NCBI GenBank assembly: GCA_029953675.1
Contig: JAMWBK010000004.1
Span: 744,001-808,000 of the forward strand
Origin: Rhodosorus marinus CCMP1338
Lineage: Eukaryota > Plantae > Rhodophyta
Reading direction: 5' to 3'
DNA length: 64,000 bases
Position numbers and translations under genes: made by a program. The notes under the pieces are model-generated. The model had not been told where the DNA came from. It made no database searches and was given only the letters and a program-made list of their open reading frames with translations. Positions 25,380 through 62,998 of this stretch are shown here, one piece after another. Each line of letters opens with the position of its first letter. Positions within the stretch are counted from its first letter, which is position 1.

Positions 25380-26155
25380 ACATCAGCCCCCTTGGCCGTA
25401 CGAGATGGGTTCGTCGTGCCCTCTCTGCTCTCAGACTGAAGACAACGCAGATTTTGGCGCCCACCTGCTCGCTAGTTGCCCGGCGGTGAAAGGTGCTCGA
25501 ACCCGCCGCCACACACGGATCTTGAACCTGTTATACCGGGAACTTCCGCCTATAGTCCGGCAAGCCGGTCTGGAAATCGAACGTGAGAAACCTTTACCCG
25601 TCGCGGACTTTCAAAATGATGAACGCCGTGTAGCCGACCTGGTGATCACCTGTGACGACAGCCGCCGTACCACATACGTTGATCTTGCTGTTCCTAACCC
25701 TCAAGCTAGTCGTTATCTCCCGGCTGCGGGGGAGCGCCGTGGATCTGCCGCCGCCAGCATGAGACGCCGCAAAGAGATCAAATACGCGGGGGCTTTGTCT
25801 TCCCCTGGTGTTCGTGCTTCGGCACTAGCACATCGCTTGGTACCCCTGATCATTGAGTGCTTTGGGTTCATGGACTCTGTTGGTTCTCGCTGGCTTCGGG
25901 AGTTGTTCCGCGAACGCCCTGACCGTCTTCAATCGTTGTTTACCTGCTTAAGTTTCCTGCTGTGGCGCATGAATGCCTCTTTGATGTTGGAGGCGCGAGT
26001 ACTTCGCCGCGCTTAGTCTTTTTTTCCCCCGGGGTTTTTTTTTTCAGCCTCCGATTAAACCATTCGTTCGTTCGTTCGATGTTGGACGCGTGATCTCCGC
26101 CGCGCATCGTCTTCGTTTCGCCTCGGGGTTTTTCTTTTAGTTTCCGATTAAACAG
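25380..26155 (+). mobile_element. Longest family A copy (open 203-aa frame 25405-26016: CCHC plus REL endonuclease, no RT) followed by a second short tail
   Basis: CPLC...HLLASC...RTRRH, VADLVI, YVDLAVPNP, KEIKY, LVPLIIECFG; (TTCG)4 tail at 26063-26078. Confidence 0.9.
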
Positions 26156-35343: not shown

Positions 35344-36700
35344 TTTGTGTCCACTGGACTTTGTGTCCACTGGCTTTATTGGACTTTACTTGGACTTGGA
35401 CTTTACTGGACTTTACTAGCATAGCCTGAAGCGCTACGCAAGGCGTGAAGATGAACTAATAACTAGGGAGGGAAGCATGCAACCCCAAGGCAAAACTTTA
35501 CTAGCATAGCCTGAAGCGCTACGCAAGGCGTGAAGATGAACTAATAACTAGGGAGGGAAGCATGCAACCCCAGGCGCCGATGGCGCGCCTCGGAAAGCAT
35601 GTGGCTGGAATATCGCCAAAGGGAGACACTTAAACGCCTCAAGAGCGCCAAATATTCAGTAGGATGCTCAGCAAAACATTTCCGCAACCACTCTAAACCC
35701 GACTTATCCACGTGACCAAAGCTTTCCACAATGAATGGCTGGAACCGGTGAGAGCGACCCTCAGCGCAAGGCAGGCTTTATTAGCATAGCCTACAGCGCT
35801 ACGCAAACCGTGAAAAGGAACTAAAAACTAGGTAGGGAAGCGTGCAAACCCAGGCGCCTCCTGCGCTCCTCGGCAAGCATGCTGCTCGAATATCGCCACA
35901 GAGAGACACTTAAGCGCCGCAAAAGTTCCAAGTATTCAACAGGATGCTCAGTGAAACATTTCGGCAACCACTCCAAACCCGACTTCTCCACGCGACCAAA
36001 GCTTTCCACAATGAAAGGCTGGAACCGGTGGGAGCGACCCTCAGCGCGAGGCAGGCTGGCCATACTCTCAGCATACCGTCGTTTCTTCACGCGGCGAAGG
36101 GCCGAAGCAGCTGCTCCCCGGCGGCGGGCGGCAGCCGTCAGATGGGCGCTTGCCACAGGGCTTGTAATCGCGAGGTCAACATATGCTGAGCGTCTGGCGG
36201 CAGCATCGGAGACGTGGAGATCGGCGATACAGCGGGGCCGTGCCCTATCCGAGACCGATCTGGGCAGTTCCGATTCCACCTCAACCGTATGCCCTACCCG
36301 AGTCAAACATTCGCTGAGAATGCACTTGAAGCGAGTGTGACGCCTCGTACGAAGACCTCTCAACAGTCCGCATGAACCTAAGAAATGGTAGCCACAAGCA
36401 TCGATCCGACTCTCACATCCCTGACAGAAAGACGGCCGATTAGAGTGCCACGGAGCTTGTGGCAAACCCAGGTAAATCCGTGCGGCAGAGCGAAACTGGA
36501 AGGCATCCAGACGGTGACCCAGAGATGACGGCAGGGTCGTTAACCACAAATGTGATAGATAGCCTCCCATGCCGCGGAGCCGAGCGGCGGTGGTAGGCGG
36601 TGTGAGTGGAGAGTTGAGCAAGAGTGCGTGAGCGCCAGGCAGGCTGCTCAGTGAAACATTTCCGCAACCACTCCAAACCCGCCTTCTCCACGTGATCAAA
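35344..36700 (-). mobile_element. Head-to-tail array of family B copies; the longest (35774-36640) keeps an open REL-endonuclease frame
   Basis: ARLRGMGG...WLTTLP...FRSAARIYLGL...CQGC...HFLGSC...RTRRH...IADL...YVDLAITSP...FQPFIVESFG. Shorter copies lie at 35495-35777 and 35344-35490. Confidence 0.9.
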
Positions 36701-38054: not shown

Positions 38055-39086
38055 TTACATGAATATCAGTCGGACTTGTTCCTTTTCAAGAGCAGTTTCT
38101 GTTGCTTCCACCCCCTCCTCGGCGTTTTTAACATCTGCATGGGCCTGTGAAACTTTAAGCTCTTGCTGCTCTACCAATTGTTTCACTAGGGCGGAGGATC
38201 TTCGAGTAGTTTTCAGGGCCTCCTTTATTGAACCCCGTACAAAGTAAGCTCCATACCCGTCGAACATCGTACTTGATCTGAAACCGGAAAAGTCGCCAAG
38301 GTTTTCTGCGTCGACGGCACTGGAGAGCTCGGGATTGAGGTTGTCACATTGCCTCACCAACGTTTGCGCCTCATCAACTTGGCGTTTGGCATGTTGCACC
38401 GCCATCCTTGTTACATCCGCGTAGGCGTTGCGTCTGCGTCCTCTGCGCCTCCACACCTGCTTTGTGTTGCACACCCACGCGTTTTCAAGACTCTCAACCG
38501 CGATATCCAATATTTTTCCCGCTGATATCAACATCTCCAGCGCCTTCTCTTGAGACCATTGGTCTCTCTGACGCATCTCCAGGGCGTGGAGCGCAAGATT
38601 CCTCTCCATCGTGCAGCGGCCCTCCTCGGGGTCCCGTACGGTGACAGTGAAGATCTGCGCTAGAACCCGTTTCCTCTCATTTTCCAGGAATGTTCGATCT
38701 TCCTCTCGACGCTTCATATCTTCCAAACCGCGTCGAGCGTTATCCGTGGCTTCTCGTAGCAAATCCAGCTGTGTCTCTATCCCCCTCAGCTCACAAGCAT
38801 CAGCTTTGTTTTTCAAGGTCCACTCCTCGACAATGTCGTTGTATGATTCCCGTGCAAACAACTTCTTCAGTACGTAGCTCTTCTCTTGCCGCAACCTGTA
38901 GGATGACTGGTCAGCCTTCTGCTTTGCCGCCATCCTCTGTATCTCCAGCTTGTCGGACCTGTTGGTGTTGGTGCGGACGATGGCCTCCAACGCATTCCTT
39001 TTAGCTTTGTAGCCATCAAACTCCCTGAGTTTTTCTTTCAAGTCCAGGTACTCCTCCCGCATGTACTCAAGTTCAGACGAAGCCAT
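38055..39086 (-). CDS. Predicted coiled-coil protein of unknown function, intronless
   Basis: 344-codon open frame, E/K/R/Q/L/A-rich and colinear with 41444-42514. First ATG is at 39086. Confidence 0.8.
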   Translation of the reverse strand: MASSELEYMREEYLDLKEKLREFDGYKAKRNALEAIVRTNTNRSDKLEIQRMAAKQKADQSSYRLRQEKSYVLKKLFARESYNDIVEEWTLKNKADACELRGIETQLDLLREATDNARRGLEDMKRREEDRTFLENERKRVLAQIFTVTVRDPEEGRCTMERNLALHALEMRQRDQWSQEKALEMLISAGKILDIAVESLENAWVCNTKQVWRRRGRRRNAYADVTRMAVQHAKRQVDEAQTLVRQCDNLNPELSSAVDAENLGDFSGFRSSTMFDGYGAYFVRGSIKEALKTTRRSSALVKQLVEQQELKVSQAHADVKNAEEGVEATETALEKEQVRLIFM

Positions 39087-40224
39087 CACGTCTTCTCAAC
39101 TTTGCTGGTTCTCTCTGAGGTTTAGTCCGAACTATTCTTCCGTTTCTGTTCTTTACTTCTCGTTATAAACTCTTCTATTTGTGTTTTGCCAACTCCTGGT
39201 CGTCTTCATCCATCTACCGGATGGGGGAGTTCTTTATAGGCACTCGTCCACCATCTTCATATCTGACCATCCACCTCGACCCACCTCTCGAATTCGGTTA
39301 GACGTCAGGATCAAACCACTGTCAATTCAGCTACCATCTATACAAAAACCACTCCCAGCTTATTCCATCCCATGCGCATAACGTCACCTCAGGCTCACTG
39401 TAAGTGTTCACGCGCGCAGTCCGTCTCTGTAAAAAACAACACCCAGCAGGTCACATCAAAACAGATAACATACAGGCCATTACCTGCTGCTACTGCTTTC
39501 TCTACTGCCACACGACCGGAAATCAGCAACGCACATCCGAAGAAGTCCCGCACACCATACGGGGAGGTTGATAAACCATCCGATGTAGGTGTCAGCCTTG
39601 AAGCACGTCCAGCATTTTACTGGACGTGCAATATTATGGCTGGATGACTCTACTGGCCGTGCAAAATTCATTTTGAATATATATTCAGGTTTAATCAATG
39701 GAACGTGCTATAGATACGAAATAAACATTCTAGATGATGGAAAACATGCTAGAATTAGGAACGATGGGCTCTTCGGCTGGTGGTTTTGCCGGATGTGACG
39801 GACTCTATGTCTGCCGCGTTCTTCGTCTTTGTGGCTGTACCAGCTTATCCTCAGGGCCTCACGTAGGAACTATTCAGAGAGGATCTCGTTTATATCTCAT
39901 TGGAGCTGTCCCCTAAGCTGCGTCCAGTCTCCTGGGCTGTGAAGCCGGAGGGTAGAAATGGTGACTAGAACAGGTGGAGCTGTTGGAGGATCTCGGATTG
40001 GCCCACGAATCTCTTCCTTAGCCAAATCGTCGCAGAAATATTTCAGAATAATGTAATAACGTGCGGTCTGACAGCCACCGACGAGAGTGGAGGGGGGCGG
40101 AAGAAGTTGCGGGGAGTGAATCAAGCAGAGGAGAAGGATGAAGAGTTCCAAAGAGTTTACAAAGAAGACGTCTTCAAAAGCATCCAGGTAGACTCAAACA
40201 AGGATGAAAGCCTCTTCAACAAGG

Positions 40225-40709
40225 TTAGTTACATGGCAGATCTCCTGGCAACGGACCCCCGCCGCCAGACGCTCAACATATGTGGACCTCGCCCCCAAAC
40301 ACCCCGTGTCAAGTACCTATATCCCCTCTGCCGCTCTCCGCGGGGGGCGGGGTGAGGGGGGAGGGGGGGCCAGCAGCTTCTGTACTTCGCCGACCGAAGG
40401 AACGACGGTATGCCGAGAGCATTGACAGTCTCCCATGGTCAGGGGCCCGTTCTCACAGGTTCCAGCCTTTCATTGAGGAAAGCTTTGGGCATCTGGAAAA
40501 GCCCAGCTTTGAGTGGCTGCGGATTTTGTTTTTATAACCATCCTGTTGAATATCCGGGACTCCTCTGCCGATTAAGTGTCGCTCTCTGGCCATATTCTAC
40601 AGCATGCTCGCATGTCACGCCACCGCCGTCTGGGTTTGCACGCTTTTCTCCCTAGTTCCCACTGCCCCTGCACGCCTTGCGAAGCGCTTCAGGCTACGCT
40701 AGTAAAACC
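40225..40709 (+). mobile_element. Family B-related 3' fragment with complete end
   Basis: Encodes RRSTYVDLA, KERRYAESI and RFQPFIEESFGH; ends ggctacgctagtaaaacc. Confidence 0.8.
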
Positions 40710-41135
40710 TCGTGGTCACCTGTGACGATAGCCGCCGTACGACCTGCGTTGATCTTGCTGTTCCTAATTCTGAGGCTAGTCGCTATTTGCCGACTGCGGG
40801 AGAGCGCCGTGGATATACCGCTGCCAATATCAGACGTCGCAAAGAGTCGAAATATGCGGGGGCCTTGTCTTCCCCAGGGCATTCGTGCTTCGGCTCTAAC
40901 TCATCGCGCCTGGTACCTCCGGTGATTGAGTGCTTTGGGTTTGTGGATTCCGATGGTTCCCGTTGCCTTCGGGAATTGTTCCGCGAACGCCCTGACCGTC
41001 TGTCCTCGTTCACCAGCTTAAATTTCTTTCTGTGGAGTATGAACGCTGCTTTGATGTTGGATTCGCGCGATCTTCGCTGCACTCAGTCTTTTTTTTCCCT
41101 CGGGTTTTCTTTCTTTCGGCCTCCGTTTAAACAAA
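40707..41135 (+). mobile_element. Family A 5'-truncated fragment fused directly to the preceding family B end
   Basis: Starts mid-motif at (D)LVVTCDDSRRTTCVDLAVPN; 3-nt overlap ACC at the junction. Confidence 0.85.
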
Positions 41136-41443
41136 TACATTCAGTAAAACCACCGTTCTTATTCTATTTTATTTTATTTTATTTTATCCAATGAATAACC
41201 GTTATTTCACATGATAGGCAATCATTCAATTTCCCGCCAATTCAAAACCAATCTGAATCAATCTGAATCAAGGTGGGTTTATTTATATGTGCATACTCGA
41301 TTCCGCCCAATCGATAGCGGGGGCAAATTCATTCTTGAAGAGGTGGGGGGGGGGTTGAACGGAGAATTCCAACACCTGGCTCGGGGAGATGGGAAGTATT
41401 CCCCAACTATATATCGCCCGGCCCGCGTAGGGAATTTATTTAC

Positions 41444-42514
41444 TCACCGGGGGAGTGAATCCCCCCTCCCAACTGTTTGCATAAATGCCACTCGGACCTG
41501 CTGATTTTCTAGAGCAGTTTCTGCTTTTTCTACCTCCTCCTCGGCCTCTTTGACATCTGTAACGCACTCTTGGACCAAAAGCTCTTGTTGCTTTACGCAC
41601 TTTTCCACGACGATGGACGATTGCCGGGTGGTTTTCAACGCCTCCTTGATCGCACGGCGTACACGGTAGGCACCATACCCGTCAAACTTAGCATTCGACT
41701 TGAAACCGGAAAAGTCACCAAGGCTATCTCCGCTGATGGTTTTTGATAGTTCAGAATTGAGTTTGGCAGCTTGTTTCGCCAACGCTTGAGCCTCCTCAAC
41801 CTGTCGCCTGGCTTGTTGCATGGCCATCCTCGCTACACTCGCGTCAGTCTTGTTGTACTTACGCCCTTCTGCGCTCTTTACCACCTGCTTCGTATTGCAC
41901 AGGAACGCGTTCTCAAGATTTTCAACCGCAAGACCCATGTTCTTCTCTGCCGATTTCATCTGCTCGAGTGCCTTCTCCTGAGAAGTTTGGTGGGTTCGCC
42001 GTCTCTCCAGGACATGTAGCGCAAGGTTCCTCTCCTTACTGCAACGGGTGACTTCAGAGTCTGCTGCGACAGCACTTAAACAGCGCTCCAAAACCTTTTT
42101 CTTCTCCATTTCTAGGAACAATCGGTCTTCGTTTCGAAGTCTCACATCTTCTAAACTCTTTCGAGCATTTTCCGCGGCCGCTCGCAGCGACTCGAGCCGT
42201 TCGTCTATTATGCTCAGCTCGTTCAAATCCAGCTTGTTCGTCAAGGTCCACTCTTCGACCTTCTCGTTGTATGGTCTTCGTACAAACACCTTCTTCGATG
42301 CGCGCTTCTTCTCCCTTACCAACCTTTCTGATGACTGGTCAGCCTTCTCCTGAGCCGCCTTCCTCCGCACCTCTAGTTTGTCCGATTTCTCAGCATTGGT
42401 CCTCATGATGGCCTCCAGCCCAGTCATTGAGCTTCTACAATCGTCATACCCCTTCAACTGTTCTTTAATGTCCAGGTACTGGTGTCTCATGTACTCAACT
42501 CGACCAGGTTCCAT
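41444..42514 (-). CDS. Predicted coiled-coil protein of unknown function, paralog of 38055-39086
   Basis: Shares AVENLENA, GDFSGF...FDGYGAY.VR..IKEALKTTR.SS with its paralog. First ATG is at 42514. Confidence 0.8.
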   Translation of the reverse strand: MEPGRVEYMRHQYLDIKEQLKGYDDCRSSMTGLEAIMRTNAEKSDKLEVRRKAAQEKADQSSERLVREKKRASKKVFVRRPYNEKVEEWTLTNKLDLNELSIIDERLESLRAAAENARKSLEDVRLRNEDRLFLEMEKKKVLERCLSAVAADSEVTRCSKERNLALHVLERRRTHQTSQEKALEQMKSAEKNMGLAVENLENAFLCNTKQVVKSAEGRKYNKTDASVARMAMQQARRQVEEAQALAKQAAKLNSELSKTISGDSLGDFSGFKSNAKFDGYGAYRVRRAIKEALKTTRQSSIVVEKCVKQQELLVQECVTDVKEAEEEVEKAETALENQQVRVAFMQTVGRGDSLPR

Positions 42515-45095: not shown

Positions 45096-46319
45096 AAAAC
45101 CACCTTTCCTATGTCCCTTTATAGATTTCCGAATCCACTACAGGCTATCGTAACCCCTGGCGTCCGCTATCTAAAATCTAAGAAACAACATCGGGATCCG
45201 TTCAACCTTCTCAACCCTTGTCCTTCCCCGCCTCCAGCTCCTGTCACCACAATTGCGCCCTCCCTTCCCATCCCTCCCATCCGACACATCCCACAAGAGT
45301 TGTAAGCAAAAACAAACAAATTCACGTTTCAAGAAGAATTACACCAATTCTCTTTTCGCAACTCCAAATTCAACAAAAAGCGGTAATTACGCTTTATTGA
45401 TTGAATATTCAGTCCAAAACTCTTGCAATTTTTTCTAGGAAAGTACGTCATTATTTAAGATGCAGTCCAAAGCGGATTTTTGTATTTCATAATTTTTAGA
45501 GCACTGCTTGTTCAGATTTACGAGGATCTTAAGTTCTATATTTAGAATATTCACGTAGAGCGTGTCCCATGTACTTTAAAAATGGTAGTGATGGCCACGT
45601 CAACAACACGTTTATTCAGAGCCTATTGGGGCAGCAGGTGTATTAAGATAAATTAGATACCTCCAAAAACAAAGATTGTAATTTGGAAGAAATTAGTTGA
45701 AGCTTAACATCAAATTTTTGCCCATTGTTTTTTCGCTTTAAAAAGCTAGCTTTGCCCCGTTCTTTTATAATGAATATTTTATCAAGGAAGTCGGCGAAGA
45801 TCCTCATAAAATGTTTCGAAAAAGGGAACAGACTTACATCAGTATATTCTGGTTCCAATTATCATATATTCGTTCAAGAGCGCAGATCTAAAGAGGGGGT
45901 AATTAACGGTTTATTTCCATGAAGATAATCGAATATATTACATAAAATAGAATAAAAGATTTTTACTCAAGGGGTATATGATTTTGATCGATATTGCGTT
46001 ACGATATTAAAAAACTGTATGAGGTTGAAGGATCTGTATCTCCCGTATAATTGTTTAGTAGTAATTTCTTTCCGTGTGTGTAAGCAATGTTAACTAGATA
46101 TGTTTTAGAATGAAATTATCAGAGTAACCCTGAAGTCGGAATTTTTTTCATTTGGTATTTGGGTTGAGTTGAGGAGAGTGGAGTTACGGACCTGAGGATA
46201 TAGGAGCAACGGGGGTGGGGTGGGGAAGGGGAAGGGTGAGGAGATTGATCGGGTATTGAAGATATACTGGGCGAGCAAGCTTGTTTTTTTTTGCTTTTGT
46301 ATTTTCTATTGAAGGAAAT

Positions 46320-47669
46320 ATGAAGAATTTTGGGATGGTTGGGATGGCGGTGGGTTGGGTAGTGGTTTTGTTGTTGCTGGGAGATGTGTTGGGGGTGAGG
46401 ATGCAGGGAGGGACGGCGGGAGCTGGCGTGTCGAGACAGGTGGGTTCGACGTGTCAGGCGGAGCTGTTGGCGTCTCAGTTCGTTCAATCATTTGCTGAGA
46501 AGTGCTACGATCTGCTCGATGGAAGCGACGTCGTGGGTCAGTTCTGTTCGTCAAATTTGGTGAAGGCAGGACTGAACTGCGCGAAGATCAAGTTCACTGT
46601 CAACGTCGGGAACCTTCGGAGCATTAAAGTCGGGATATACCAGGACTGCAACATGGTACCGAACAGCAATCAGGCCAAGTTTACACACACGCGAACGCTA
46701 ACTGGGACGGTGAAGTCAAAGTCAATGACCGTGTGTCCGGACGAGATTGGGTCCGGCTCTAACTGCTGTGATGCCAGTCAGTGCATGGTGGCCGAAGCCA
46801 GGTTCAGGAAGAACGGCGTGGAGAAGAAAATCAAGCCCGGAAACGGCTGCTTTAACGGTGGAAACGGCAACGGCAATGGTCGCATCTGTCCTCTTAAAAT
46901 GAACTGCGTGAACGTCATCAACGGAACGAATGGGGACGATAATCTTGTGGGGACCAAGTTCGTCGACTATATTTACGGTTTCAACGGTGACGATACTATC
47001 GATGCTCTGGGAGGCAATGATCGAATCTTCGGTGGCCTCGGAGATGACAATATCGAGGGTGGTAGTGGAAAGGACTACATTCGAGGTGACGATGGGAACG
47101 ACCACATCGATGGGGAGGACGGGAAGGACTATATATACGGTAACGGTGGTTACGATATCATTCGTGGTGGCTTTGGGAATGACGTTTTGGATGGAGGCAA
47201 CCAGAACGATCTCATACAGGGGGAAGAAGGTAATGATGATATCATGGGAGGGAATCAGAACGATACACTGGAGGGCGGTGATGGGGACGATAGGATCCGA
47301 GGTGGTAACGGCGACGACTTTATGTATGGTGGGGATGGAGCTGACAATCTCGGAGGGAACGACGGAAATGACGTAATCTATGCCGGGCGGGGTAACGATA
47401 TCCTCAACGGAATGGATGATAATGACTTCTTATACGGAGAAAAGGGCGATGATCGGATCCAAGGTGGACGCGGTGACGACACCCTGCGTGGCTATGACGG
47501 AGACAACTACGCTAACGGCGGAAGTGGTGACGATTACTTCAACTTTGGCGACGGAGACGATGAGATCCTCGGGGGTGCGGGCAATGACTTAATTGTGAGC
47601 GGCGGAGGGTTCGATGCTATTGATGCCGGAACAGGTAGTAATACGGTAGATGGCATACCAAACCTCTGA
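46320..47669 (+). CDS. Secreted protein: signal peptide, Cys-containing N-domain and 27 in-register RTX-type nonapeptides
   Basis: ATG at 46320 (MKNFGMVGMAVGWVVVLLLLGDVLG); nonapeptides from GTNGDDNLV to AGTGSNTVD counted by hand. Confidence 0.9.
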   Translation: MKNFGMVGMAVGWVVVLLLLGDVLGVRMQGGTAGAGVSRQVGSTCQAELLASQFVQSFAEKCYDLLDGSDVVGQFCSSNLVKAGLNCAKIKFTVNVGNLRSIKVGIYQDCNMVPNSNQAKFTHTRTLTGTVKSKSMTVCPDEIGSGSNCCDASQCMVAEARFRKNGVEKKIKPGNGCFNGGNGNGNGRICPLKMNCVNVINGTNGDDNLVGTKFVDYIYGFNGDDTIDALGGNDRIFGGLGDDNIEGGSGKDYIRGDDGNDHIDGEDGKDYIYGNGGYDIIRGGFGNDVLDGGNQNDLIQGEEGNDDIMGGNQNDTLEGGDGDDRIRGGNGDDFMYGGDGADNLGGNDGNDVIYAGRGNDILNGMDDNDFLYGEKGDDRIQGGRGDDTLRGYDGDNYANGGSGDDYFNFGDGDDEILGGAGNDLIVSGGGFDAIDAGTGSNTVDGIPNL

Positions 47670-48234
47670 TGAGTAGAGTAGAAGGCGAGGCACGATTGAC
47701 CCTTCACAACTTGAAAAATAACTCCTAGCGGCGATGAACATACAACTTTTATTAAAAAGAAAGATGTATCCCCTCATACCCTCCGTACTTCTGCCGTGTT
47801 TGTTACGCAGCCCGCGAGCTGGGAGCTAATCTGAGTTGCTCCTCTACAGTAGGATGGGATCCAGAAGCGGTCCTACACAGCACCGACCGTGGACGGGTTT
47901 GAGACCGAATATGAAATCATACTCCTGACCCCGTCTGTTAGGAGCGCGTCGTCAAGTTCATTTTGGCAATGGCCATGGTATCCGACCTCCGCTCATCGGA
48001 TATGGAAGGAAGGAACGGGAGCGCCGAAGTGATCGAGTTGAACTGTCAACACTGCTCCTCATGCAACAGATAGGTTGACGGGCAAAAAGCTTGGACGTTT
48101 AGGCTCCAAACACGTTGACCAAGCGGAAAGGTTGATTTATTAGTTCGTTAAAGGCGGTATGCCTTATCCTTTGTATAATCGAATTGAATGTGGGGAAGCT
48201 GCAGAACATGTTCGGACAGATCCTGTTTAAGGCT

Positions 48235-48635
48235 TGCTTGCGAAGCGCGCCATAGGCGCCTGGGTTTGCACGCTTCCCTACCTAGTTCTTAGTTCCTTTT
48301 CACGTCTTGCGTAGCGCTTCAGGCTATGCTAATAAAGCCAGTTTAAGCCTTCCAGGAGAACTTCCTCAACCCGGATGTTCCTTTAAGCCGCCTTCCGCAG
48401 TGACCATGATTCGGTGGCTCTAGTCCTGCACTAGAAAATTCCGCTGGTTCTCGTTGGCTTCGGTAATTGTTCCGCGAGCGCCCTGACCGTCTGTCGTCGT
48501 TGTTTACTCGTTTAAGTTTCTTGCTGTTGCGTATGAACATTGCTTTGATGGAGGGGCGCGATCTTCGCCATACAGGGTCTTGTTTAGTCCTCGGGGTTTT
48601 TTCTCAGTCCCCGATTGAACGAATTCATTCAGTCC
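48235..48635 (+). mobile_element. Family B 3' end (48235-48342) followed by a family A fragment (about 48435-48635)
   Basis: ...ggctatgctaataaagcc followed by gctggttctcgttggcttcggtaattgttccgcgagcgccctgaccgtc. Confidence 0.85.
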
Positions 48636-49381: not shown

Positions 49382-51433
49382 TCACGGACGCGGGATTGGA
49401 GTCGGGTGAGGTCTAAGCTTTCCAGCGTCTATGTTCGCAGGGCAAGGTTTTCTGTTCTTCCGATTCCCCAGTACGCAACAGGAGGAATTAGAGCACTGGT
49501 CTATTTCAAGGACGACGGAGACAGACCATCCACCACTGTCTGGGTAGGAGACCGAGACCTTTGGGAACTGCCTTTTGACGATATCCTCAAGGTTGTAGTG
49601 GAAGATGAAAACGCCATAGTACTTGCCGTCGTCGAACTTTTTGTACCCACCGGCAACCTCGGCGCTGAACGACTCAGGCGGAACTCGGACATCGTTGACG
49701 AAGACGCTGGGCTTGTCTTCACTTCCATAAGCGCGAGAATGAGAAATACGAATCGCGACGACGCCACCAGGAGTGTTCGGGAGGTTTTCAAAGTAGTAGT
49801 GCACTTTCTTGTTCTTTTCAATGGGCGCGGGGAAGTCAGGCTTGTTGTTGTTGTGGTCTCTTACGTACGAAGCGTAGTGTCTCGACCTGTTCACTTTCCT
49901 CCGCTCACGAGATGGTTTGTCGAAGGCTACCTCAAACACTGTAGTCTCATAGGGGAAGAGGACCACCTGAGATGGGAGAAAGATTCTATCACCCTTCTTC
50001 TCCTGTCTAGAAACCGTCCACCACAAGTCACCGCCAACCAGGATGCTCTGAGCCCTCTCCTGTGGTGATAGCGGCTTCTTGTTTATTCGCAGTCGGCGTC
50101 GCTCGAACCATTTGAGCGGATCTCTGCCGTGCGGAAACAGCAAGTTCACCGTAGCTTCTGAGTCTATAAGGTTTTGCATTATAATATAGCCCTTGAATCT
50201 CGTCGAGACTGCGTTGACGCTGACCTGAACGTTGTTCGAGCTAGTGTAGATGAACTCGCCGTCCAAGCCCTTGAGAAGCTCAAAGTATTTCACCAAGTTC
50301 GTGAACTCGACATTTCCATTCCGTTTCTCATTAATAAGGCTCCATGGGTAGTGGTTTCCGTTGTCGATATCTCTCTGCTCCTGGGTTTCCATATTGATGA
50401 AGGTAATGACCTGGAGAACGTTATTGGGAATTCTCATTAGCATCATGAGCACCTTAAGAGCCTCGTTCATGATCGAAAAATCCCTGGAACTCAGGGGTGG
50501 AGCCGCCTCACGCCTGGCTCGACTGTACCAGTTGCTTATGTACTGCCCCATCTCACTGACGAGGTATGGTTGTGGCTTCCCATTCTCGCTGAGCCATGAA
50601 CTGTAGGTCTCTATTAGGTCCAAGTTGGCCTCAGCATAAGAGCCACCGATGTTATAGACGTGCTCAGAGATGAACTTTTGGCACCGCTTCTTTGCTGCGC
50701 CGTCGAGCCAGATCTTCATTCGCTTCTTGAACAGAGCAAAGTCCTTGAACGATGGCCTTACGAAAGCGGCTGCCGGTCCTCCCGTCAAAACCTTCTTCGA
50801 GTATCCCTCAAGCTCCTCGCAGAGCTCAGTACAGAGCTCGGTGATTCTCGCGACGAAGTCATCATGGCTCTCGTGCGCCTTCTTGAGCCTCGAGGCCTTT
50901 CCCATTGGTTCATTGAAGCACTCGTAGTAGGAGGGTAGAACATACTGATCATCGAAAAAGTACCTGAAGAAATTCCCAGCGTACGAGACTGCCTTTTCAC
51001 GCATGCTCTTGTTGCGAGTGATCCGCGGGATCATGAACGGATCGTCTGCAACCACCCGCTTTTCACTGAGGAATCTAAGCTGATAAGTGTTGCACCTCTT
51101 GCATTGTTTGTTATTGAGGTCCCTCTTTCCATCCTCCTCCACCAGAAATCTCGCCGCTCTCGTCGGGAATGTTCCCTCCTTGAACGGTCCCTTTGTAGAC
51201 CGGCTGAAAGAGACCTGCAGGACTGTAGTCAGGTAGTCCAACATGCGCTGAGGAACCACATCAGTATCTGGCTTGAACGTTCCGTGTCCATTCACATACT
51301 GCCTCCTCGAAAATACGTCCACGTTCCCAGTTCGCAGCGTACACCCAAAATCAGCCCTTACTGTAACGCTGTACGAAGTGACGCTCGATGTGGTCACAAG
51401 GACCACGAATACGGTCACCCAACATGCCTTCAT
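49382..51433 (-). CDS. GH86 beta-porphyranase/beta-agarase-like glycoside hydrolase with signal peptide, intronless
   Basis: Clan GH-A catalytic contexts YECFNEP and YLVSEMG. GGPAAA, F..RMKIWLDGA, GSYAEANLDLIETYS, FELLKGLDGE...SSN.QVSVNA and a C-terminal YPDSGGWSVSVVLEID parallel Bacteroides plebeius porphyranase A as I recall it (comparison from memory). Confidence 0.8.
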   Translation of the reverse strand: MKACWVTVFVVLVTTSSVTSYSVTVRADFGCTLRTGNVDVFSRRQYVNGHGTFKPDTDVVPQRMLDYLTTVLQVSFSRSTKGPFKEGTFPTRAARFLVEEDGKRDLNNKQCKRCNTYQLRFLSEKRVVADDPFMIPRITRNKSMREKAVSYAGNFFRYFFDDQYVLPSYYECFNEPMGKASRLKKAHESHDDFVARITELCTELCEELEGYSKKVLTGGPAAAFVRPSFKDFALFKKRMKIWLDGAAKKRCQKFISEHVYNIGGSYAEANLDLIETYSSWLSENGKPQPYLVSEMGQYISNWYSRARREAAPPLSSRDFSIMNEALKVLMMLMRIPNNVLQVITFINMETQEQRDIDNGNHYPWSLINEKRNGNVEFTNLVKYFELLKGLDGEFIYTSSNNVQVSVNAVSTRFKGYIIMQNLIDSEATVNLLFPHGRDPLKWFERRRLRINKKPLSPQERAQSILVGGDLWWTVSRQEKKGDRIFLPSQVVLFPYETTVFEVAFDKPSRERRKVNRSRHYASYVRDHNNNKPDFPAPIEKNKKVHYYFENLPNTPGGVVAIRISHSRAYGSEDKPSVFVNDVRVPPESFSAEVAGGYKKFDDGKYYGVFIFHYNLEDIVKRQFPKVSVSYPDSGGWSVSVVLEIDQCSNSSCCVLGNRKNRKPCPANIDAGKLRPHPTPIPRP

Positions 51434-54400
51434 GGTTTCGCTCTGCAGCAACTCTTACATCACATGTTCCTCTCAGTCCTCGTTTCCTTGTTGTCGCTCA
51501 TCGTAGTCCCCTCGACCGGAATTTATAGTACAAGCGATTGTCTAGGGTTGATTAAATCACTGCGGTTTTAGGCAAGAGGAAGGCCCAAACACGAGCAGTG
51601 TTTTGTTTCTCACACGGTTTTTCTCCGTTTATTTTTTGACCGTAGGCTCATCCCCTGTACATGGCTCGATTTCAAGAGCGACGATTTCATACGGTGTGGA
51701 CTTCAACCTGGCGGGAGGCTGGGCGGAGCCAGCACTTCCCCATATTAGAATAGAGTTAAAGATCAAGTCATATAAAGGGGTAAAAGTGATCTTTGATCGC
51801 AGAACATGGCCACAACTGTTTGCTCTAGGAGGAGCGATATTCGTCCCAAAAATGAATTCTGCACGTTTTGCGGTGGAGACAGGAGTTTGTTGTGGATAGG
51901 CGGGTTGGACAGTTAAATTGTTTTTGTAGCGTGGTTTGTTACAGTCGCGAGAACTCAACACAGATGATAAGAGCGTTTCATACTCTACAACCCGCTCGCC
52001 CTTTTTGTTTATCCGTCAAAATCTTCAATGTACTTCATCTAGGGAATCGCACCCTATTACTTGCGACGGTTCTAGCCGATCTCCACCGGTCTAATCATTT
52101 TACACGTACCCCATCACACCACAACAACGCACGTGTCCCCTGCCAACACCATCGTTAATCATTGGCTGCGGCGCTGACGTGCATTGGACATCGGCAGAAA
52201 GAGAGTCAACATGCGCTGACCTAGTTCTGAAAATTTTGTGTTATGGGGTCGTCCGCTCCAAGCCATGCAAACCAAGAGTCTGGCAACGCTCGCAAATGCC
52301 CTGTAAAAAACTTTGCAAATCGAAGCAGCAACCTCGACTCTCAGAAGCTATTTCTGTGTTGAAGATCAATTGGCAAACAGAGTTTGATGCGAATTATCTA
52401 AAGAAGTGCCCAATGGTAGACGTCCCTGTCTGACAGTGTGGGGAAAAACCCGACGTGAAGTGAAGGAAAATGTCTAGGATTATGTTGACCTCGCCACAAT
52501 CTCTGTAGCCTTTATACCCGTTTCTCCAAAAGTAACTCAGCTCGTGTCTGCACGCCACAATGCTGAGAAAAGCCCCGCGCATAAAAAAATAAAAATCACC
52601 CCTAGAGTTGAAGAGGACGAACGTTGGAGAGATTCGAGACAGTCGGGATTGGACATCCGCAAAGTCCAATCCCTGATGCGGTTGCGATTTGTGCCTTGCC
52701 CAAGTGGTTGTTCTACCACCTCAAGCAGAAAATCTACCTCTGTATGATCCGATACTCAACGTTTTTCGACGTGTGCTAGTGGAAGTCAAGGGAAAATTTT
52801 CCCTTTGGGACTTACTCAGAAACACGTGAATTGGGTGAAAAGTTTTAGCAGTCAAAATATTGCTACAAGACTTGGCAGCATCAAGAGTGCCATTCGAAAA
52901 GGTTGAAAAGTATAGTCCTAGTTTCGAGCTCTCCTGCTTCTCTCCCTGAGAGAAATTACCCCGTTGATCTTGGCCCACAGTCATGGTGCCGCGTTATGTT
53001 GCCACCTGTAAAATTTTCCCACGAAGAGCCAGTCCCTTCCTTCTCCCTCGTAGCCCTTGGCACAGGGGAGATACTTTTCAGACACCAACCCTACACAACG
53101 AGAGACAAAAAACCAAAAAAAAAACAAAACGCGGGCACTCTAAGGAAGATCCAATGTGATAAAATTCGCTCTCCTCTCCCCCTGCGCTCCGTTTCTTGAA
53201 TTCAGCCGTTATCCCTGAACTTGAATACGCTAGCCGAATCGTCGGTGATGATGCAACCATATGTACACATCCCCTAGCTCGAGACAGTGGACGTAATTTT
53301 CGACACACCCTAGCGTACTGACAGCAAGACAAAAAATAATGAACCCATTTACCTAAATATGAAAATCGCCTGGACACTCCCCAACGCCTATCCCTCTTTC
53401 CCCGCGAAAACATCCCTTCCTTCCCCCCCCCCCCTGTGGCCCTTTAAGTTTACTTAATGGGAACTAGGAAGCCGGGTAATGTGCGATTGAACATCTCACA
53501 CACAACAAAAACACAGCAAGAGCACGAAAAAAGGGTTTTCCAAATCGGAGACTTCTTTTCTCTGCTTCTTATGGGAGTTTCTCGAACACCTCGCGCTCTT
53601 CTCTGGAGGGAGCTGGCAAGCTTTCTAATGCGATATCTCTCCCTCTCTCTCACTTCACCGGAAGGAGCCAGTGTGGCCTCTCCTCAGTTTACTCGTGGGA
53701 GCTATAGCAGCCCTCATGTTCGCTACTAGGGAGAGAGAGAGAATATAAGAGAAACAAGGTGAGGCGGTTTCCTCAAGGAGAGGGGGTGGGAGTGGATGAT
53801 CGTTTCTCCAAGGCATTCCAATCCCATCCTTACCCGGTAAGCGCGTTTAATGAACCCCCCCTTTACTACACTACGAAACATATCATTTAGTTATTCAATT
53901 ATTTGTTTAATTCTATTCTTATAGCAAATCGGGAGAAAATTTGGAGCCCCTTTTCATTGTCCACCGCAATGGAGATTGATTGATTTGATCTTCCTACAGA
54001 TTCCTGATCTGTACGTGGATATACTGTTCTTTGAAAATATATAGTTTTTAATGCGATATTAGCATCACCGGATTTACGCTGTATGGATTTATCAAAATAC
54101 GAGAAGGTACGTCTTGCGTTAATTTTATTTTCTACCCGGTAGCGGTGGAGTTGTGAAAAACTATAGATACCGATTATTCATATATATTTCAACAATATTT
54201 GGGTGGTAATCAATTAAATAGTTTCACCCAGAGGAGGAAAAAGAATAAGCCGGAATATCCAGTCATTTTACAAGAAGATGAAGCATTGTGAGAAGTCAAC
54301 AATAGAATCAAATATTAAAATTGCATCCAATTATATTCCAAGAATTTAAACGTTCGCGGAATGAGGTTGAATGACTGAGCAACACGCTTTTTTTGGTTTG

Positions 54401-56134: not shown

Positions 56135-56845
56135 CGGCGGATTTTGGCGCCCACCTGCTCGCCAGCTGCCCCGCTGTAAAAGGCGCCCGAACCCGACGAC
56201 ATACGCGGATTTTGAACCTGTTATACCGCGAACTTCGACCTATCGCACGGTAAGCCGGTCTTGAAATTGAACGTGAGAAGCCCCTGCCTGTCCTGGACTA
56301 CCAGAGTGATGAACGCCGCGTGGCTGACCTCGTGGTCACCTGTGACGATAGCCCGCGTACGACATACGTTGATCTTGCTATTCCTAATCCTCAGGCTGGT
56401 CGATATTTGGCTGCGGGAGAGCGAGGTGGATTTGCCGCTGCCAATATGAGACGTCGCAAAGAGTTGAAACTTGCGGGGGCGTTGTCTTCCCCAGGCATTC
56501 GTTCTGCGGCTCTAGCTCATCGCCTGGTACCTCTGGTCATTGAATGCTTTGGGTTTAATCCATCGATGGCACTTTTCGTTTGCGAGAGATGTTTCATGAT
56601 CGCTGAGTCTCCTGGTACCTCTGGTCACTGTGTGCTTTGGGTTTGTGGATTCCGTTGGTTCTCGTCGGCTTCGGGAATTGTTCCGCGAACGCCCTGACCG
56701 TCTATCCTCGTTGTTTACCCGCTTTAAGTTTCTTGCTCTGGCCTATGAACGCTGCTTTGATGTTGGAGGCGCGTGGTCTTCGCCGCGCTTAGTCTTTCTT
56801 TTCCCTTCGGTTTTCTTTCTTTCAGCCTCCGATTAAACCAATTCA
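56135..56845 (+). mobile_element. Family A copy (56135-56560) plus a second stacked tail (56600-56845)
   Basis: DFGAHLLASCPAVKGARTRRH...VADLVVTCDDSPRTTYVDLAIPNP...LVPLVIECFG. Confidence 0.85.
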
Positions 56846-57029
56846 CTCACTCGACCAAGCATATGTTCAACGCTTCAATCAACAATTTCATTCAATCAAC
56901 GAACTGTCAAATCAATCTCCCCAAAAATATGTTCTGCCGGCATTGAATAGTGATCATTTCTGAGCTTTGACAGACTGTCGCTACAATTCAATGGTTTTTC
57001 TGTTTGCATGATGAATTTTGTTCAGTCGG

Positions 57030-57210
57030 AGTCTGAAAGAAAAACCAGGAGGGGAAAAAAAGAACTAAGCGTGGCGAGGATCGCGCGCCTCCAACATCAA
57101 AGCAGCGGTCACACGCCACAGCCAGAAACTTAAACGGGTAAAAAACGACGCCAGACGGTCAGGGCGTTCGCGGTTAACAATTCCCGCAGCCAACGAGAAC
57201 CAAAGGAATC
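57030..57210 (-). mobile_element. Family A 3' fragment
   Basis: Reverse complement of ...ccgcgaacgccctgaccgtc...tttgatgttggaggcgcg...cttagttctttttt. Confidence 0.8.
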
Positions 57211-62100: not shown

Positions 62101-62998
62101 GGCAAGTCCTTGCCAGCGTATGCATAAACTTACATCTAGACATCCACCCTCATCCCCATAGTCTGATGTAGACATACACCGGCTCAGGTCATCTGGGTCG
62201 AAACACTCATTTTCCGAGGCAAGGCAACAGGCACAGTTGTAGGATGTGTTGATATAGCCCTTTGGGTATAGCGGAGAATACACTCTTTAAGCGATGGAGC
62301 GAGATTCCGAGAAAAGCTGATATTCTCACCTCGGAGGTTTCAGCACATGTCGAGCTCCCGAAAGCTTCCGGGGAAAGACATTCTCCTCCAGACGCGCACA
62401 AGCCTGTGACGCAGCAGCTCTTTAGCATTTGGCATACTGTGATGTTGGGACCAGTGGCTTGCCTAATCACGCAGGCGCCATCTGGACCCGGATCCATTGG
62501 TTTCATCTCCGCCCTGATAGTGGTTGAATCTGGTCCTTCGATGATGGCATGGGCGATGATTGATAGAGACGGGACGTCACAGCACCCAAGCTCATTTGCT
62601 TGTATATCATTGGCGCAGAAGATAATGGACAGCTTTCGCACCTCAGTGTCCGCAGCAAGGCCCCTATTCGCCAAGTAATTGGTCTTGTTCTTCCGCTTTG
62701 GGTAATTCACTGGTATCGGAATGAGAGACTCCTCGGCGAAGATCCCCGCCCGTACCGATACCAGGTCAGCATCGTTCGACAAGAAGGTAATCCTCACACA
62801 GTTTTCCCCATCCCTCTCTTTGTTTCGAACCCGAACCTGACCAACAACTTCTCCATTGTACACGAGGTCTCGGTTAAAGCCCTCCACGAACTCCAGCGCT
62901 ATGGTGGTGTCAACGTCCGCGCAGGTGTTCGGACCGAACTGTGCCGCAACGAAGGCAGCAAACAGCGGCAACACGAGGATACTGAACACCAACCTCAT
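59188..62998 (-). CDS. 15-exon secreted protein (~785 aa): signal peptide, N-domain and tandem six-cysteine modules, one per exon
   Basis: Exons read by hand: 62998-62330, 62259-62134, 62035-61901, 61808-61671, 61577-61446, 61343-61236, 61132-60992, 60809-60672, 60582-60472, 60349-60227, 60130-60005, 59905-59768, 59678-59568, 59445-59323, 59226-59188 (TGA). All 14 introns are GT..AG, 70-182 nt and phase 0, and the spliced frame has no internal stop. Confidence 0.85.
59190..60830. repeat. Internal tandem duplication with 904-bp period inside the Cys-module gene
   Basis: 59190-59770 is almost identical to 60094-60674, introns included. The flanking exon pair 59905-59768 / 60809-60672 is visibly more diverged. 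Confidence 0.92.

What the first reader, a model, noticed from the sequence alone, without database searches (positions are those of the whole stretch)
49382..51433. Eukaryotic, signal-peptide-bearing GH86 beta-porphyranase-like enzyme
Seen: an intact intronless 683-codon frame with a hydrophobic N-terminus, both clan GH-A glutamates in NEP and SE contexts, and a C-terminal beta-domain. It sits among eukaryotic retroelement debris, which argues against a bacterial contig. Established: the characterised GH86 enzymes are bacterial agarases and porphyranases that degrade red-algal galactans. Inference: if the host is a red alga, this is a candidate endogenous wall-galactan remodelling enzyme, acquired from or ancestral to marine bacterial GH86s. 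Unstudied algal homologues may already be in databases.
Basis: partly seen in the sequence, partly recalled or inferred. Interest (0 to 1): 0.72.

Follow-up and report, generated by a model that had tools for sequence, protein, structure and literature searches.

The report
Red-algal GH86 galactanase-like gene family
This is a real, intact nuclear gene of the unicellular red alga Rhodosorus marinus for a secreted enzyme of family GH86, a family otherwise characterised only in bacteria that digest red-seaweed galactans. It is one of about ten copies in that alga and probably trims the alga's own galactose-rich coat, though nobody has tested this.

Summary
Window 49382..51433 (-) is an uninterrupted 683-codon gene with a signal-peptide-like N-terminus. 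It matches solved GH86 enzymes and no other family (E=1e-20). Both catalytic glutamates are present (E175 in NEP, E294 in SEMG), as are the two GH86-type C-terminal beta-sandwich domains.

The window is from the Nanopore chromosome-scale nuclear assembly of the red alga Rhodosorus marinus CCMP1338 (3.19-Mb contig). The gene's GC content and codon usage match neighbouring host genes, so it is not bacterial contamination.

It belongs to a multigene family: at least 7 loci in this genome, several MMETSP transcripts from other R. marinus strains, and one from Bangiopsis. All of these fall in one clade (100% NJ bootstrap) set apart from bacterial GH86.

The inner algal clade keeps the catalytic core. 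It has replaced about ten residues that are conserved in bacterial GH86 and has gained cysteines, so agarase or porphyranase specificity cannot be assumed.

The most likely role is a secreted retaining endo-glycanase (or transglycosylase) acting on the galactose-rich cell-bound polysaccharide of Stylonematophyceae, acquired by old bacterial gene transfer and then duplicated. This would parallel the GH16 enzymes of red seaweeds. Substrate, expression of this copy and direction of transfer are untested. Interest is moderate.

The parts
49382..51433 (-). Complete single-exon coding sequence of the GH86-family protein (683 codons plus TGA stop at 49382-49384).
   Evidence: ORF list. The annotated gene in GCA_029953675.1 translates to exactly this protein. 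GH86 matches in the PDB.
51374..51433 (-). Predicted secretory signal peptide (residues 1-20, MKACWVTVFVVLVTTSSVTS, probable cleavage before YSV).
   Evidence: Hydropathy of the N-terminus. Comparable hydrophobic N-termini occur in all full-length family members. No dedicated signal-peptide predictor was available, so the cleavage site is an inference.
50234..51373 (-). (beta/alpha)8 catalytic module of clan GH-A type (about residues 21-400).
   Evidence: Aligns to the catalytic domains of 8H97, 5TA1 and 4AW7. Invariant R43, R78, E171, N174, E175, H258, Y260, D272, E294, F345, Y362.
50909..50911 (-). Codon of E175, the predicted general acid/base (FNEPMG motif).
   Evidence: Aligned with the NEP motif of all solved GH86 enzymes. 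Glu in 109 of 111 relatives.
50552..50554 (-). Codon of E294, the predicted catalytic nucleophile (LVSEMG motif).
   Evidence: Aligned with the residue that is Gln in the BuGH86 E322Q nucleophile mutant 5TA0. Glu in 111 of 111 relatives.
49844..50233 (-). First beta-sandwich (Ig-like) domain, about residues 401-530.
   Evidence: Pfam PF18206 Porphyrn_cat_1 at residues 404-453, 25.4 bits, just below the cut-off. Above the cut-off in paralogues. Collinear with the solved structures.
49490..49825 (-). Second beta-sandwich domain (BPA_C-like), about residues 537-648.
   Evidence: Pfam PF18040 at residues 548-644, 16.1 bits, below the cut-off. phmmer domain 2 against 8H97 covers residues 537-648. 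Invariant R567, N580, G635.
49385..49501 (-). Alga-specific C-terminal tail: four-Cys motif (C647, C652, C653, C664) followed by a Pro-rich end. In longer paralogues a linker and a CBM4_9-like module follow here; in this gene nothing follows.
   Evidence: Cys positions. The motif is shared with P0002, P0003, P0004, P0005 and P0007. No CBM-coding sequence downstream or elsewhere in the window.
51522..51527 (-). TATAAA hexamer about 90 nt upstream of the ATG; a possible core promoter element.
   Evidence: Read directly from the sequence. Inference only, not tested.

Best explanation
The gene encodes a secreted, catalytically competent family-GH86 enzyme of the red alga Rhodosorus marinus. It would work as a retaining endo-beta-glycanase: E175 protonates the leaving group and E294 forms the glycosyl-enzyme intermediate.

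It is one member of a family of roughly ten genes that, among the sequences whose source I could name, occurs only in Stylonematophyceae (Rhodosorus, Bangiopsis). The family most likely descends from one old transfer of a bacterial GH86 gene, followed by duplication and adaptation to the eukaryotic secretory pathway (extra cysteines, host codon usage).

Its most probable substrate is the alga's own extracellular, galactose-rich and partly sulfated polysaccharide. It would cut or re-join this during growth, division or mucilage turnover.

Shown here: the gene is intact; it belongs to GH86; it sits in the nuclear genome; the family is expanded; the catalytic core is conserved.

Inferred: secretion, enzymatic activity, substrate, physiological role, and direction of transfer.
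For: - Intact ORF identical to the annotated gene.
- GH86-only matches in the PDB. The family profile aligns end to end with three solved GH86 structures at E of 1e-130 to 1e-142.
- Catalytic Glu pair and the clan GH-A signature residues are invariant. E294 aligns with the experimentally defined BuGH86 nucleophile E322.
- Host is a Nanopore chromosome-scale red-algal assembly. GC 0.51 and GC3 0.64 compare with 0.50 and 0.60 for neighbouring transporter genes, and RSCU correlation is r=0.64.
- Paralogues in the genome: NDN08_000131, _000651, _000604, _007293, _004409 and _002142/_002144. There are also poly(A)-derived MMETSP transcripts of R. marinus and Bangiopsis.
- The algal clade has 100% NJ bootstrap support, with bacterial outgroups such as Lentimonas, Marinoscillum, Sediminitomix and Agaribacterium.
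- Cys content is four-fold higher than in the other (mostly bacterial) GH86 sequences.
- Some paralogues carry CBM4_9 modules.
- Stylonematophyceae hold a cell-bound polysaccharide with up to 78-87% galactose, and a sulfated galactan has been reported from Chroodactylon (PMC9031348).
- Precedent: red-seaweed GH16 enzymes of bacterial origin, one of them a proven beta-porphyranase (PMC9771727).
Against: - No expression evidence for this particular copy. The MMETSP transcripts found are of paralogues only 34-38% identical to it.
- No activity data exist for any algal GH86.
- Ten positions conserved in at least 80% of bacterial GH86 are replaced in the inner algal clade (W235F, N266Y, R335I, P344T, K349E, W352E, W387L, R394F, R602D, and a loop Arg deleted). 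Substrate recognition may therefore differ from any known GH86.
- The polysaccharide of Rhodosorus itself was not described in the papers I could read.
- The structure model failed (pLDDT 36.7), so catalytic geometry was not checked in 3D.
- The tree is neighbour-joining and unrooted, and four clade members come from unidentified samples.
Confidence: 0.6

Rival explanations
1. The enzyme is secreted but acts on foreign polysaccharides, for example galactans of other red algae or bacterial exopolysaccharides. The purpose would be nutrition, competition or control of epibionts rather than remodelling of the alga's own matrix.
For: All characterised GH86 enzymes are degradative agarases or porphyranases. 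Some family members carry CBM4_9 modules typical of degradative enzymes. The Rhodosorus matrix composition is not documented in what I read.
Against: The host is a photoautotrophic unicell. About ten paralogues kept over long divergence in a lineage that itself makes galactose-rich bound polysaccharide fit a housekeeping wall role better. The red-seaweed GH16 precedent is interpreted as endogenous.
Confidence: 0.15
2. The protein is mainly a transglycosylase. The same retaining mechanism is used to cut and re-ligate matrix galactan chains, as plant XTH enzymes do with xyloglucan, rather than to hydrolyse them.
For: A retaining mechanism with both Glu residues conserved permits transglycosylation. 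Several cleft-lining residues conserved in the hydrolytic bacterial enzymes are replaced in the inner algal clade. Wall-building transglycanases are the known use of bacterial-type GH folds in plants and green algae (cited in PMC9771727).
Against: There is no direct evidence. No known GH86 transglycosylase turned up in the literature I searched.
Confidence: 0.15
3. The direction of transfer is the reverse, or GH86 is ancestral in red algae: marine bacteria obtained GH86 from a red alga.
For: The NJ tree is unrooted. The algal clade is deep and is not strongly nested inside any bacterial group (nodes joining it to particular bacteria have 55% support or less).
Against: Bacterial GH86 sequences are far more numerous and span several phyla (Bacteroidota, Verrucomicrobiota, Gammaproteobacteria). 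Among the hits whose source I could check, the eukaryotic ones come only from Stylonematophyceae. The gene is a single exon in a genome averaging about 3 introns per gene.
Confidence: 0.08
4. The gene is a decaying or non-catalytic copy (a pseudoenzyme or lectin-like wall protein) of the family. It lacks the CBM of its longer paralogues and is not expressed as an enzyme.
For: It has no C-terminal CBM although the linker-like Pro-rich tail remains. Many bacterial-conserved positions are changed. No transcript of this copy was found.
Against: 683 codons are open. The catalytic pair and all clan GH-A signature residues are intact. Its 60-63%-identical paralogue NDN08_000131 keeps the same features, which indicates purifying selection.
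Confidence: 0.05
5. The gene is bacterial contamination or an assembly chimera.
For: Bacterial-type family; single exon; a neighbouring gene carries bacterial-type RTX repeats.
Against: It lies about 790 kb inside a 3.19-Mb long-read contig with eukaryotic genes on both sides. Composition and codon usage match the host. Paralogues sit on at least four other Mb-scale contigs and in independent transcriptomes of other strains. Identity to any bacterial protein is only about 25-28%.
Confidence: 0.02

Closest known systems
Bacterial GH86 beta-agarases and beta-porphyranases with solved structures: Aga86A-type beta-agarase 8H97, Bacteroides uniformis BuGH86 (5TA1/5TA0), Bacteroides plebeius BpGH86A (4AW7)
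   Same: Same three-domain layout: a (beta/alpha)8 barrel plus two beta-sandwich domains. Same NEP acid/base and SE(x)G nucleophile motifs. Same further invariant residues (R43, R78, E171, H258, Y260, D272, F345, Y362, N580). All have an N-terminal secretion signal.
   Different: - Only about 23-28% identity.
- Eukaryotic nuclear gene.
- About four-fold more cysteines and a four-Cys C-terminal tail.
- The 10-residue loop after the H-x-Y motif is deleted, including a conserved Arg.
- Bacterial-conserved W235, N266, R335, K349, W352, W387, R394 and R602 are replaced.
- At the published -2 subsite positions it has Thr80 (as in agarases, not the Phe of the porphyranase) and Asn347 (neither the Ser of the porphyranase nor the Met of BuGH86).
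- Substrate unknown.
Red-macroalgal GH16 enzymes (Chondrus crispus CcGH16-1/2/3, with Gracilariopsis and Porphyra homologues); CcGH16-3 is a proven beta-porphyranase (PMC9771727)
   Same: A red-algal nuclear gene family with signal peptides. It is related to marine bacterial galactan hydrolases, is explained by bacterial gene transfer followed by duplication, and is proposed to act on the alga's own matrix.
   Different: A different fold and family (beta-jelly-roll GH16 versus TIM-barrel GH86). A different algal lineage (Eurhodophytina seaweeds versus unicellular or filamentous Stylonematophyceae). So this would be an independent acquisition, and no biochemical data exist for the GH86 family.
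Rhodosorus marinus paralogue NDN08_000131 (KAJ-series entry; P0002)
   Same: 60-63% identical over the full length. Same signal peptide, catalytic motifs and Cys-rich tail. Also a single continuous ORF in the genome.
   Different: It lies on another contig (JAMWBK010000013.1). Its database model is 586 aa because an in-frame 303-nt GT..AG 'intron' was called inside conserved coding sequence.

Membership tests
Glycoside hydrolase family 86 (CAZy GH86, clan GH-A) | Significant sequence similarity of the catalytic module to characterised GH86 members, and not to another GH family. | tested here: met
   phmmer against all PDB chains returns only GH86 entries at E up to 1: 8H97 1.3e-20, 5TA1 2.4e-12, 4AW7 4.8e-8. 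The exhaustive search gives 208 relatives, and the named ones are GH86-type proteins.
Glycoside hydrolase family 86 (CAZy GH86, clan GH-A) | Two catalytic glutamates in clan GH-A positions: acid/base in N-E-P after strand 4, nucleophile in S/T-E-x-G after strand 7. | tested here: met
   E175 and E294 are present. E175 is conserved in 109/111 and E294 in 111/111 relatives. E294 aligns with the BuGH86 E322Q site in 5TA0.
Glycoside hydrolase family 86 (CAZy GH86, clan GH-A) | Two C-terminal Ig-like beta-sandwich domains (Pfam PF18206 Porphyrn_cat_1 and PF18040 BPA_C). | tested here: met
   This protein scores just below the Pfam cut-offs (25.4 of 27 bits; 16.1 of 26.2 bits). It aligns over residues 537-648 to the last domain of 8H97. 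Its paralogues pass both cut-offs. The family profile is collinear with the whole of the solved structures.
Glycoside hydrolase family 86 (CAZy GH86, clan GH-A) | Three-dimensional catalytic geometry: TIM barrel with the two Glu about 5 angstroms apart across the cleft. | tested here: inconclusive
   The AlphaFold2 model, built with the only three admissible sequences, had mean pLDDT 36.7 and pTM 0.27 and is unusable. No fold search was run on it.
Glycoside hydrolase family 86 (CAZy GH86, clan GH-A) | Endo-beta-1,4 cleavage of agarose or porphyran (EC 3.2.1.81 / 3.2.1.178). | not testable with these tools
   Needs enzyme assays. Sequence hints are mixed: agarase-type Thr80, a novel Asn347, and loss of several residues conserved in bacterial GH86.
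Endogenous red-algal matrix glycanase of bacterial origin (the kind represented by CcGH16-3) | Encoded in the algal nuclear genome rather than by an associated bacterium. | tested here: met
   The exact protein is on a 3.19-Mb contig of the R. marinus long-read assembly. Eukaryotic neighbours. Host-like composition.
Endogenous red-algal matrix glycanase of bacterial origin (the kind represented by CcGH16-3) | Algal sequences form a clade related to bacterial enzymes, consistent with one transfer followed by duplication. | tested here: met
   A 16-sequence clade with 100% NJ bootstrap contains all Rhodosorus and Bangiopsis sequences, and its neighbours are bacterial. Rooting and donor are unresolved. 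Four clade members are of unidentified origin.
Endogenous red-algal matrix glycanase of bacterial origin (the kind represented by CcGH16-3) | Expressed and secreted by the alga, and active on a matrix polysaccharide. | not testable with these tools
   Only indirect support: a signal-peptide-like N-terminus, MMETSP transcripts of paralogues, and galactose-rich bound polysaccharide in the class.

The most novel reading that the evidence does not exclude
Stylonematophyceae independently domesticated a bacterial GH86 and expanded it into a family of about ten secreted enzymes with a rebuilt substrate cleft. These would act on a still undescribed, lineage-specific sulfated galactan or xylogalactan of the cell sheath, some of them as transglycosylases. 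That would make them the first eukaryotic GH86 enzymes and possibly a new GH86 specificity. It would also be a second, convergent case (after GH16 in red seaweeds) of red algae building their matrix-remodelling toolkit from the genes of their bacterial degraders.
Probability: 0.4. Interest if true: 0.65.

Novelty: new variant of a known kind. Interest (0 to 1): 0.55.

Why it matters
GH86 is treated in the literature I could search as a hallmark of bacteria that degrade red-algal agars. None of the papers retrieved by my four GH86 searches of the library links it to a red-algal or other eukaryotic genome.

A conserved, expanded GH86 family in an early-branching red-algal class would have several consequences:
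- It would give a handle on how red microalgae remodel their poorly known extracellular matrix.
- It would add an independent parallel to the GH16 story in red seaweeds.
- It could provide enzymes with new specificity for structural analysis of red-microalgal polysaccharides, which are of commercial interest.
- It flags a practical problem for marine metagenomics. GH86 counts are used as markers of bacterial agarolysis, but some hits may be algal.

It also shows that at least one deposited gene model of this family (NDN08_000131) is truncated by a mis-called intron.

Tried and rejected
1. Word-index homology searches performed badly here. The single query found only itself and one paralogue. 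Profile queries A1 and A2 returned only hits to their first sequence. The exhaustive HMMER search was what revealed the family.

I did not pursue this, because the donor lineage is unresolved anyway.

3. Structure prediction could use only the window protein, P0002 and P0014. The model was useless (pLDDT 36.7), so no fold search was run.

4. I tried to identify the organism behind Logan contig SRR22824290 (P0014). The contig has about 500 nt of non-coding flank on each side and no neighbouring gene. The accession appears in no paper and is not listed in the R. marinus genome paper. It remains unidentified. P0005, P0015 and P0019 could not be looked up.

5. I looked for a downstream CBM-coding exon or a second GH86 copy in the window. 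Neither exists.

6. NCBIfam gave no hit. Rfam found nothing in the window.

7. Contamination was rejected on context, composition and paralogue distribution.

8. I checked whether the RTX neighbour travels with GH86. No RTX sequence lies near paralogue NDN08_000131, so no conserved gene pair.

9. dN/dS between the paralogues was not computed, because synonymous sites are saturated at 60% protein identity.
Full report
**Observation**

The minus strand of window 49382..51451 carries an open reading frame. From its first ATG at 51433 it runs 683 codons to a TGA stop. It is the longest ORF in the 64-kb window; the next longest is 542 aa. By my own arithmetic, 683 consecutive sense codons have a chance probability of about 6e-15.

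The first 20 residues (MKACWVTVFVVLVTTSSVTS) form a short charged start followed by a strongly hydrophobic core, with Kyte-Doolittle means up to 2.75. This is the pattern of a secretory signal peptide. No dedicated predictor was available, so the cleavage site is inferred.

**Family assignment**

A phmmer search against every PDB chain returned only GH86 enzymes, even at E up to 1:
- the beta-agarase 8H97, E=1.3e-20
- Bacteroides uniformis BuGH86 (5TA1/5TA0), E=2.4e-12
- the Bacteroides plebeius beta-porphyranase BpGH86A (4AW7), E=4.8e-8

The alignment places FNEPMG (N174-E175-P176) on the NEP motif and LVSEMG (S293-E294) on the ISEYG motif of these enzymes.

The Bacteroides paper states that the BuGH86 nucleophile is E322 and that 5TA0 is the E322Q mutant (PMC5849685). 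In the profile alignments, 5TA0 reads ISQ exactly where the algal proteins have SE. E294 is therefore the homologue of an experimentally defined nucleophile.

In a MAFFT alignment of 111 near-full-length relatives, E175 is Glu in 109 and E294 in all 111. An 18-sequence alignment has further invariant residues typical of clan GH-A barrels: R43, R78, E171, N174, H258, Y260, D272, F345 and Y362.

The C-terminal third matches the two GH86-specific beta-sandwich domains:
- For this protein the Pfam scores fall just under the curated cut-offs: PF18206 25.4 of 27 bits, PF18040 16.1 of 26.2 bits.
- Paralogues pass both cut-offs.
- The family profile aligns end to end with all solved GH86 structures, E of 1e-130 to 1e-142. 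That profile includes bacterial sequences, so it shows collinearity rather than independent significance.

NCBIfam has no model that hits the protein. I conclude that GH86 membership is met on every criterion that sequence can test. The three-dimensional check failed for technical reasons, described under dead ends below.

**Host and context**

The exact protein is recorded once, on contig JAMWBK010000004.1 (3,191,941 bp) of assembly GCA_029953675.1, Rhodosorus marinus, at about 783-805 kb. The genome paper (PMC10250338) describes the assembly:
- strain CCMP1338, a Nanopore long-read assembly
- 13 contigs over 1 Mb, 31.2 Mb in total
- telomeres on 12 contigs
- 8,392 BRAKER gene models with 24,821 introns

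Rhodosorus is a unicellular member of the red-algal class Stylonematophyceae.

The window also holds two amino-acid transporter genes (Aa_trans, E=1e-42 and 2e-38), a reverse-transcriptase ORF and a bZIP ORF.

The GH86 gene has GC 0.51 and GC3 0.64, against 0.50-0.51 and 0.60-0.61 for the transporter genes. Its codon usage correlates with theirs (RSCU r=0.64), at least as well as two host genes correlate with each other.

Contamination or a chimeric join is therefore very unlikely. What flanks the gene are copies of a dispersed ~550-nt repeat at 48232-48602 and 56327-56849.

**A gene family, not a single gene**

The exhaustive HMMER scan of 1.84 billion cluster representatives found 208 relatives at E<1e-3. 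Cluster look-ups showed that the best hits are all from Rhodosorus marinus.

- Genome models: NDN08_000131 (60% identical), _000651, _000604, _007293, _004409, and the fragments _002142 and _002144. The two fragments are on the same 3.19-Mb contig but outside the window.
- Transcripts from the MMETSP poly(A) transcriptomes of other R. marinus strains: P0003, P0154, P0004/P0152/P0153 and P0026.
- One transcript from Bangiopsis sp. CCMP1999, another Stylonematophyceae (P0013).

UniProt already labels several of these automatically as 'Beta-porphyranase A C-terminal domain-containing protein'. Some members carry C-terminal CBM4_9-like modules. The window gene ends in a Pro-rich stub with no such module, and none is encoded downstream.

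The closest paralogue, NDN08_000131, is deposited as a 586-aa protein. In the genome it is a continuous 687-codon ORF. The annotated 303-nt in-frame GT..AG intron removes conserved residues of the barrel. I regard this as a probable mis-annotation.

**Phylogeny**

I built a neighbour-joining tree from 620 trimmed columns of the 111 sequences, with 100 bootstraps.
- All Rhodosorus and Bangiopsis sequences, plus four sequences from Logan read-set assemblies, fall in one clade with 100% support.
- An inner clade of ten, containing the window gene, also has 100% support.
- The next sequences out are bacterial or metagenomic. Named examples among the close hits are a Lentimonas 'beta-agarase', Marinoscillum, Sediminitomix, Agaribacterium and a Rikenellaceae MAG.
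- Nodes linking the algal clade to any particular bacterium have 55% support or less, so no donor can be named.
- The tree is unrooted.

Three observations favour one old bacterium-to-alga transfer followed by duplication: the breadth of bacterial GH86; the absence of any named eukaryote other than Stylonematophyceae among the hits I could check; and the single-exon structure in an intron-containing genome.

Within the family, identities fall to 22-38% between subclades, so the duplications are old.

One of the four unidentified clade members (P0014) lies on a 4.1-kb contig of SRR22824290. It has about 500 nt of non-coding sequence on each side and no neighbouring gene. This fits a eukaryote, but I could not identify the sample.

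**How the algal clade differs from bacterial GH86**

- Cysteine content is 1.39% against 0.34%. This includes a C-x2-C pair near residue 111 and a four-Cys tail (C647, C652, C653, C664), shared with P0002, P0003, P0004, P0005 and P0007. This is what one expects of a protein adapted to the eukaryotic secretory pathway.
- Of the columns conserved in at least 80% of the bacterial sequences, the catalytic core is kept.
- The inner algal clade has replaced W235 (F), N266 (Y/V), R335 (I/V/T), P344, K349 (E/D), W352 (E/S/D/Q), W387 (L), R394 (F) and R602.
- It has also deleted the ten-residue loop after H258-x-Y260, which carries a conserved Arg.

The Bacteroides study names two positions that set the -2 subsite:
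- Phe77 in the porphyranase against Thr82 in the agarase. In the alignments this is two residues after the invariant Arg; the window protein has Thr80 there.
- Ser326 in the porphyranase against a Met in the agarase, at the base of the sulfate pocket. This is two residues after the invariant Phe; the window protein has Asn347 there.

The paper's number for that Met (396) did not fit my count of the chain, so I rely on the alignment with Ser326 rather than on the number.

Taken together, the machinery for catalysis is intact but the cleft has been remodelled. The label 'beta-porphyranase-like' should be read as a fold and family statement, not as a substrate prediction.

**Likely function**

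Characterised GH86 enzymes are retaining endo-beta-1,4-galactanases of agarose and porphyran.

A survey of red microalgae reports that Stylonematophyceae keep their polysaccharide bound to the cell, and that it is rich in galactose: Bangiopsis 78%, Rhodaphanes 87%, Chroothece 58%. [quoted passage not shown] Rhodosorus itself was not analysed there.

The nearest precedent is the GH16 family of Chondrus, Gracilariopsis and Porphyra. Its authors attribute that family to bacterial gene transfer plus duplication. One member, CcGH16-3, proved to be a beta-porphyranase (PMC9771727). That paper does not mention GH86.

My best explanation is therefore a secreted retaining glycanase, or transglycosylase, that cuts or rearranges the alga's own galactose-rich matrix.

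My confidence, by step:
- It is a genuine nuclear GH86 gene: about 0.95.
- It is secreted: about 0.8.
- It is catalytically active: about 0.75.
- It has the endogenous-substrate role: about 0.45.

**Known or new**

My four GH86 searches of the held library (7.99 million PMC papers plus bioRxiv) retrieved no paper that connects GH86 with a red-algal or other eukaryotic genome. The sequences are public but uncharacterised and only auto-annotated. I could not consult CAZy itself.

I rate this as a new variant of a known kind: a eukaryotic, expanded, cleft-remodelled branch of a family known from bacteria. It plays the part that GH16 plays in red seaweeds. Interest is moderate (0.55). A CAZyme or algal cell-wall specialist would find it worth an assay, but it does not overturn anything.

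**Dead ends**

- The three word-index homology searches gave almost nothing.
- The structure model, limited to a three-sequence alignment by the tool's admission rule, was unusable (pLDDT 36.7), so no fold search was made.
- Rfam found nothing in the window.

Noticed in passing
window 46317-47669 (+); 21436-22395 (-); 3-170 (-); 62207-62998 (-): A local family of secreted-looking proteins with a Cys-containing N-terminal domain that has no Pfam hit. Three of the four pieces carry bacterial-type RTX calcium-binding nonapeptide repeats (PF00353: E=1e-49 with 10 repeat stretches in the first, E=1e-18 in the second). The first is an annotated 422-aa gene, convergent with the GH86 gene and 1.7 kb from it. 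The piece at 3-170 is cut by the window edge. The ORF at 62207-62998 has only the N-terminal domain. This may be another bacterial-derived extracellular family in this alga. No RTX sequence lies near the GH86 paralogue in L001.
   Followed up: partly
L001:10001-12064 (R. marinus contig JAMWBK010000013.1, gene NDN08_000131): The deposited 586-aa model splices out an in-frame 303-nt GT..AG 'intron' (CDS nt 903-1205). The genomic sequence is open throughout (687 codons), and the removed 101 residues are conserved barrel sequence. This is a probable annotation error, or less likely an alternative splice.
   Followed up: yes
window 41444-42514 (-), 38055-39089 (-), 33760-34571 (-): Three tandem copies of a coiled-coil-rich protein without any Pfam domain, at 54% and 46% identity to the first. 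The third copy is split over two frames, so it has an intron or is a pseudogene.
   Followed up: partly
window 40600-41143, 48232-48602, 56327-56849, inverted copy 57049-57173; related tandem units 25983-26153: A dispersed repeat of about 550 nt at 64-91% identity, with copies on both sides of the GH86 gene (0.8 kb downstream and 5 kb upstream). It is probably a non-autonomous transposable element. There is no sign that it mobilised the gene.
   Followed up: partly
window 598-1998 (-) and 18518-19918 (+): Two 466-aa amino-acid transporter genes (Pfam Aa_trans) in opposite orientation, 16.5 kb apart. They flank a GC-rich (0.56-0.61) stretch at 10-14 kb that holds the reverse-transcriptase ORF (11984-13450) and a 542-aa ORF without Pfam hits. 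This may be a duplication around a retroelement insertion.
   Followed up: no
window 35410-36057: A tandem repeat with a 280-nt unit (2 copies, 86% matches) containing a perfect 85-nt sub-repeat. It overlaps a 292-aa ORF that has no Pfam hit.
   Followed up: no
L003 (Logan contig SRR22824290_164471, 4144 nt): A 1043-aa GH86 protein with a CBM4_9 module (P0014) belongs to the algal clade, but its sample could not be identified. About 500 nt of non-coding sequence lies on each side.
   Followed up: partly
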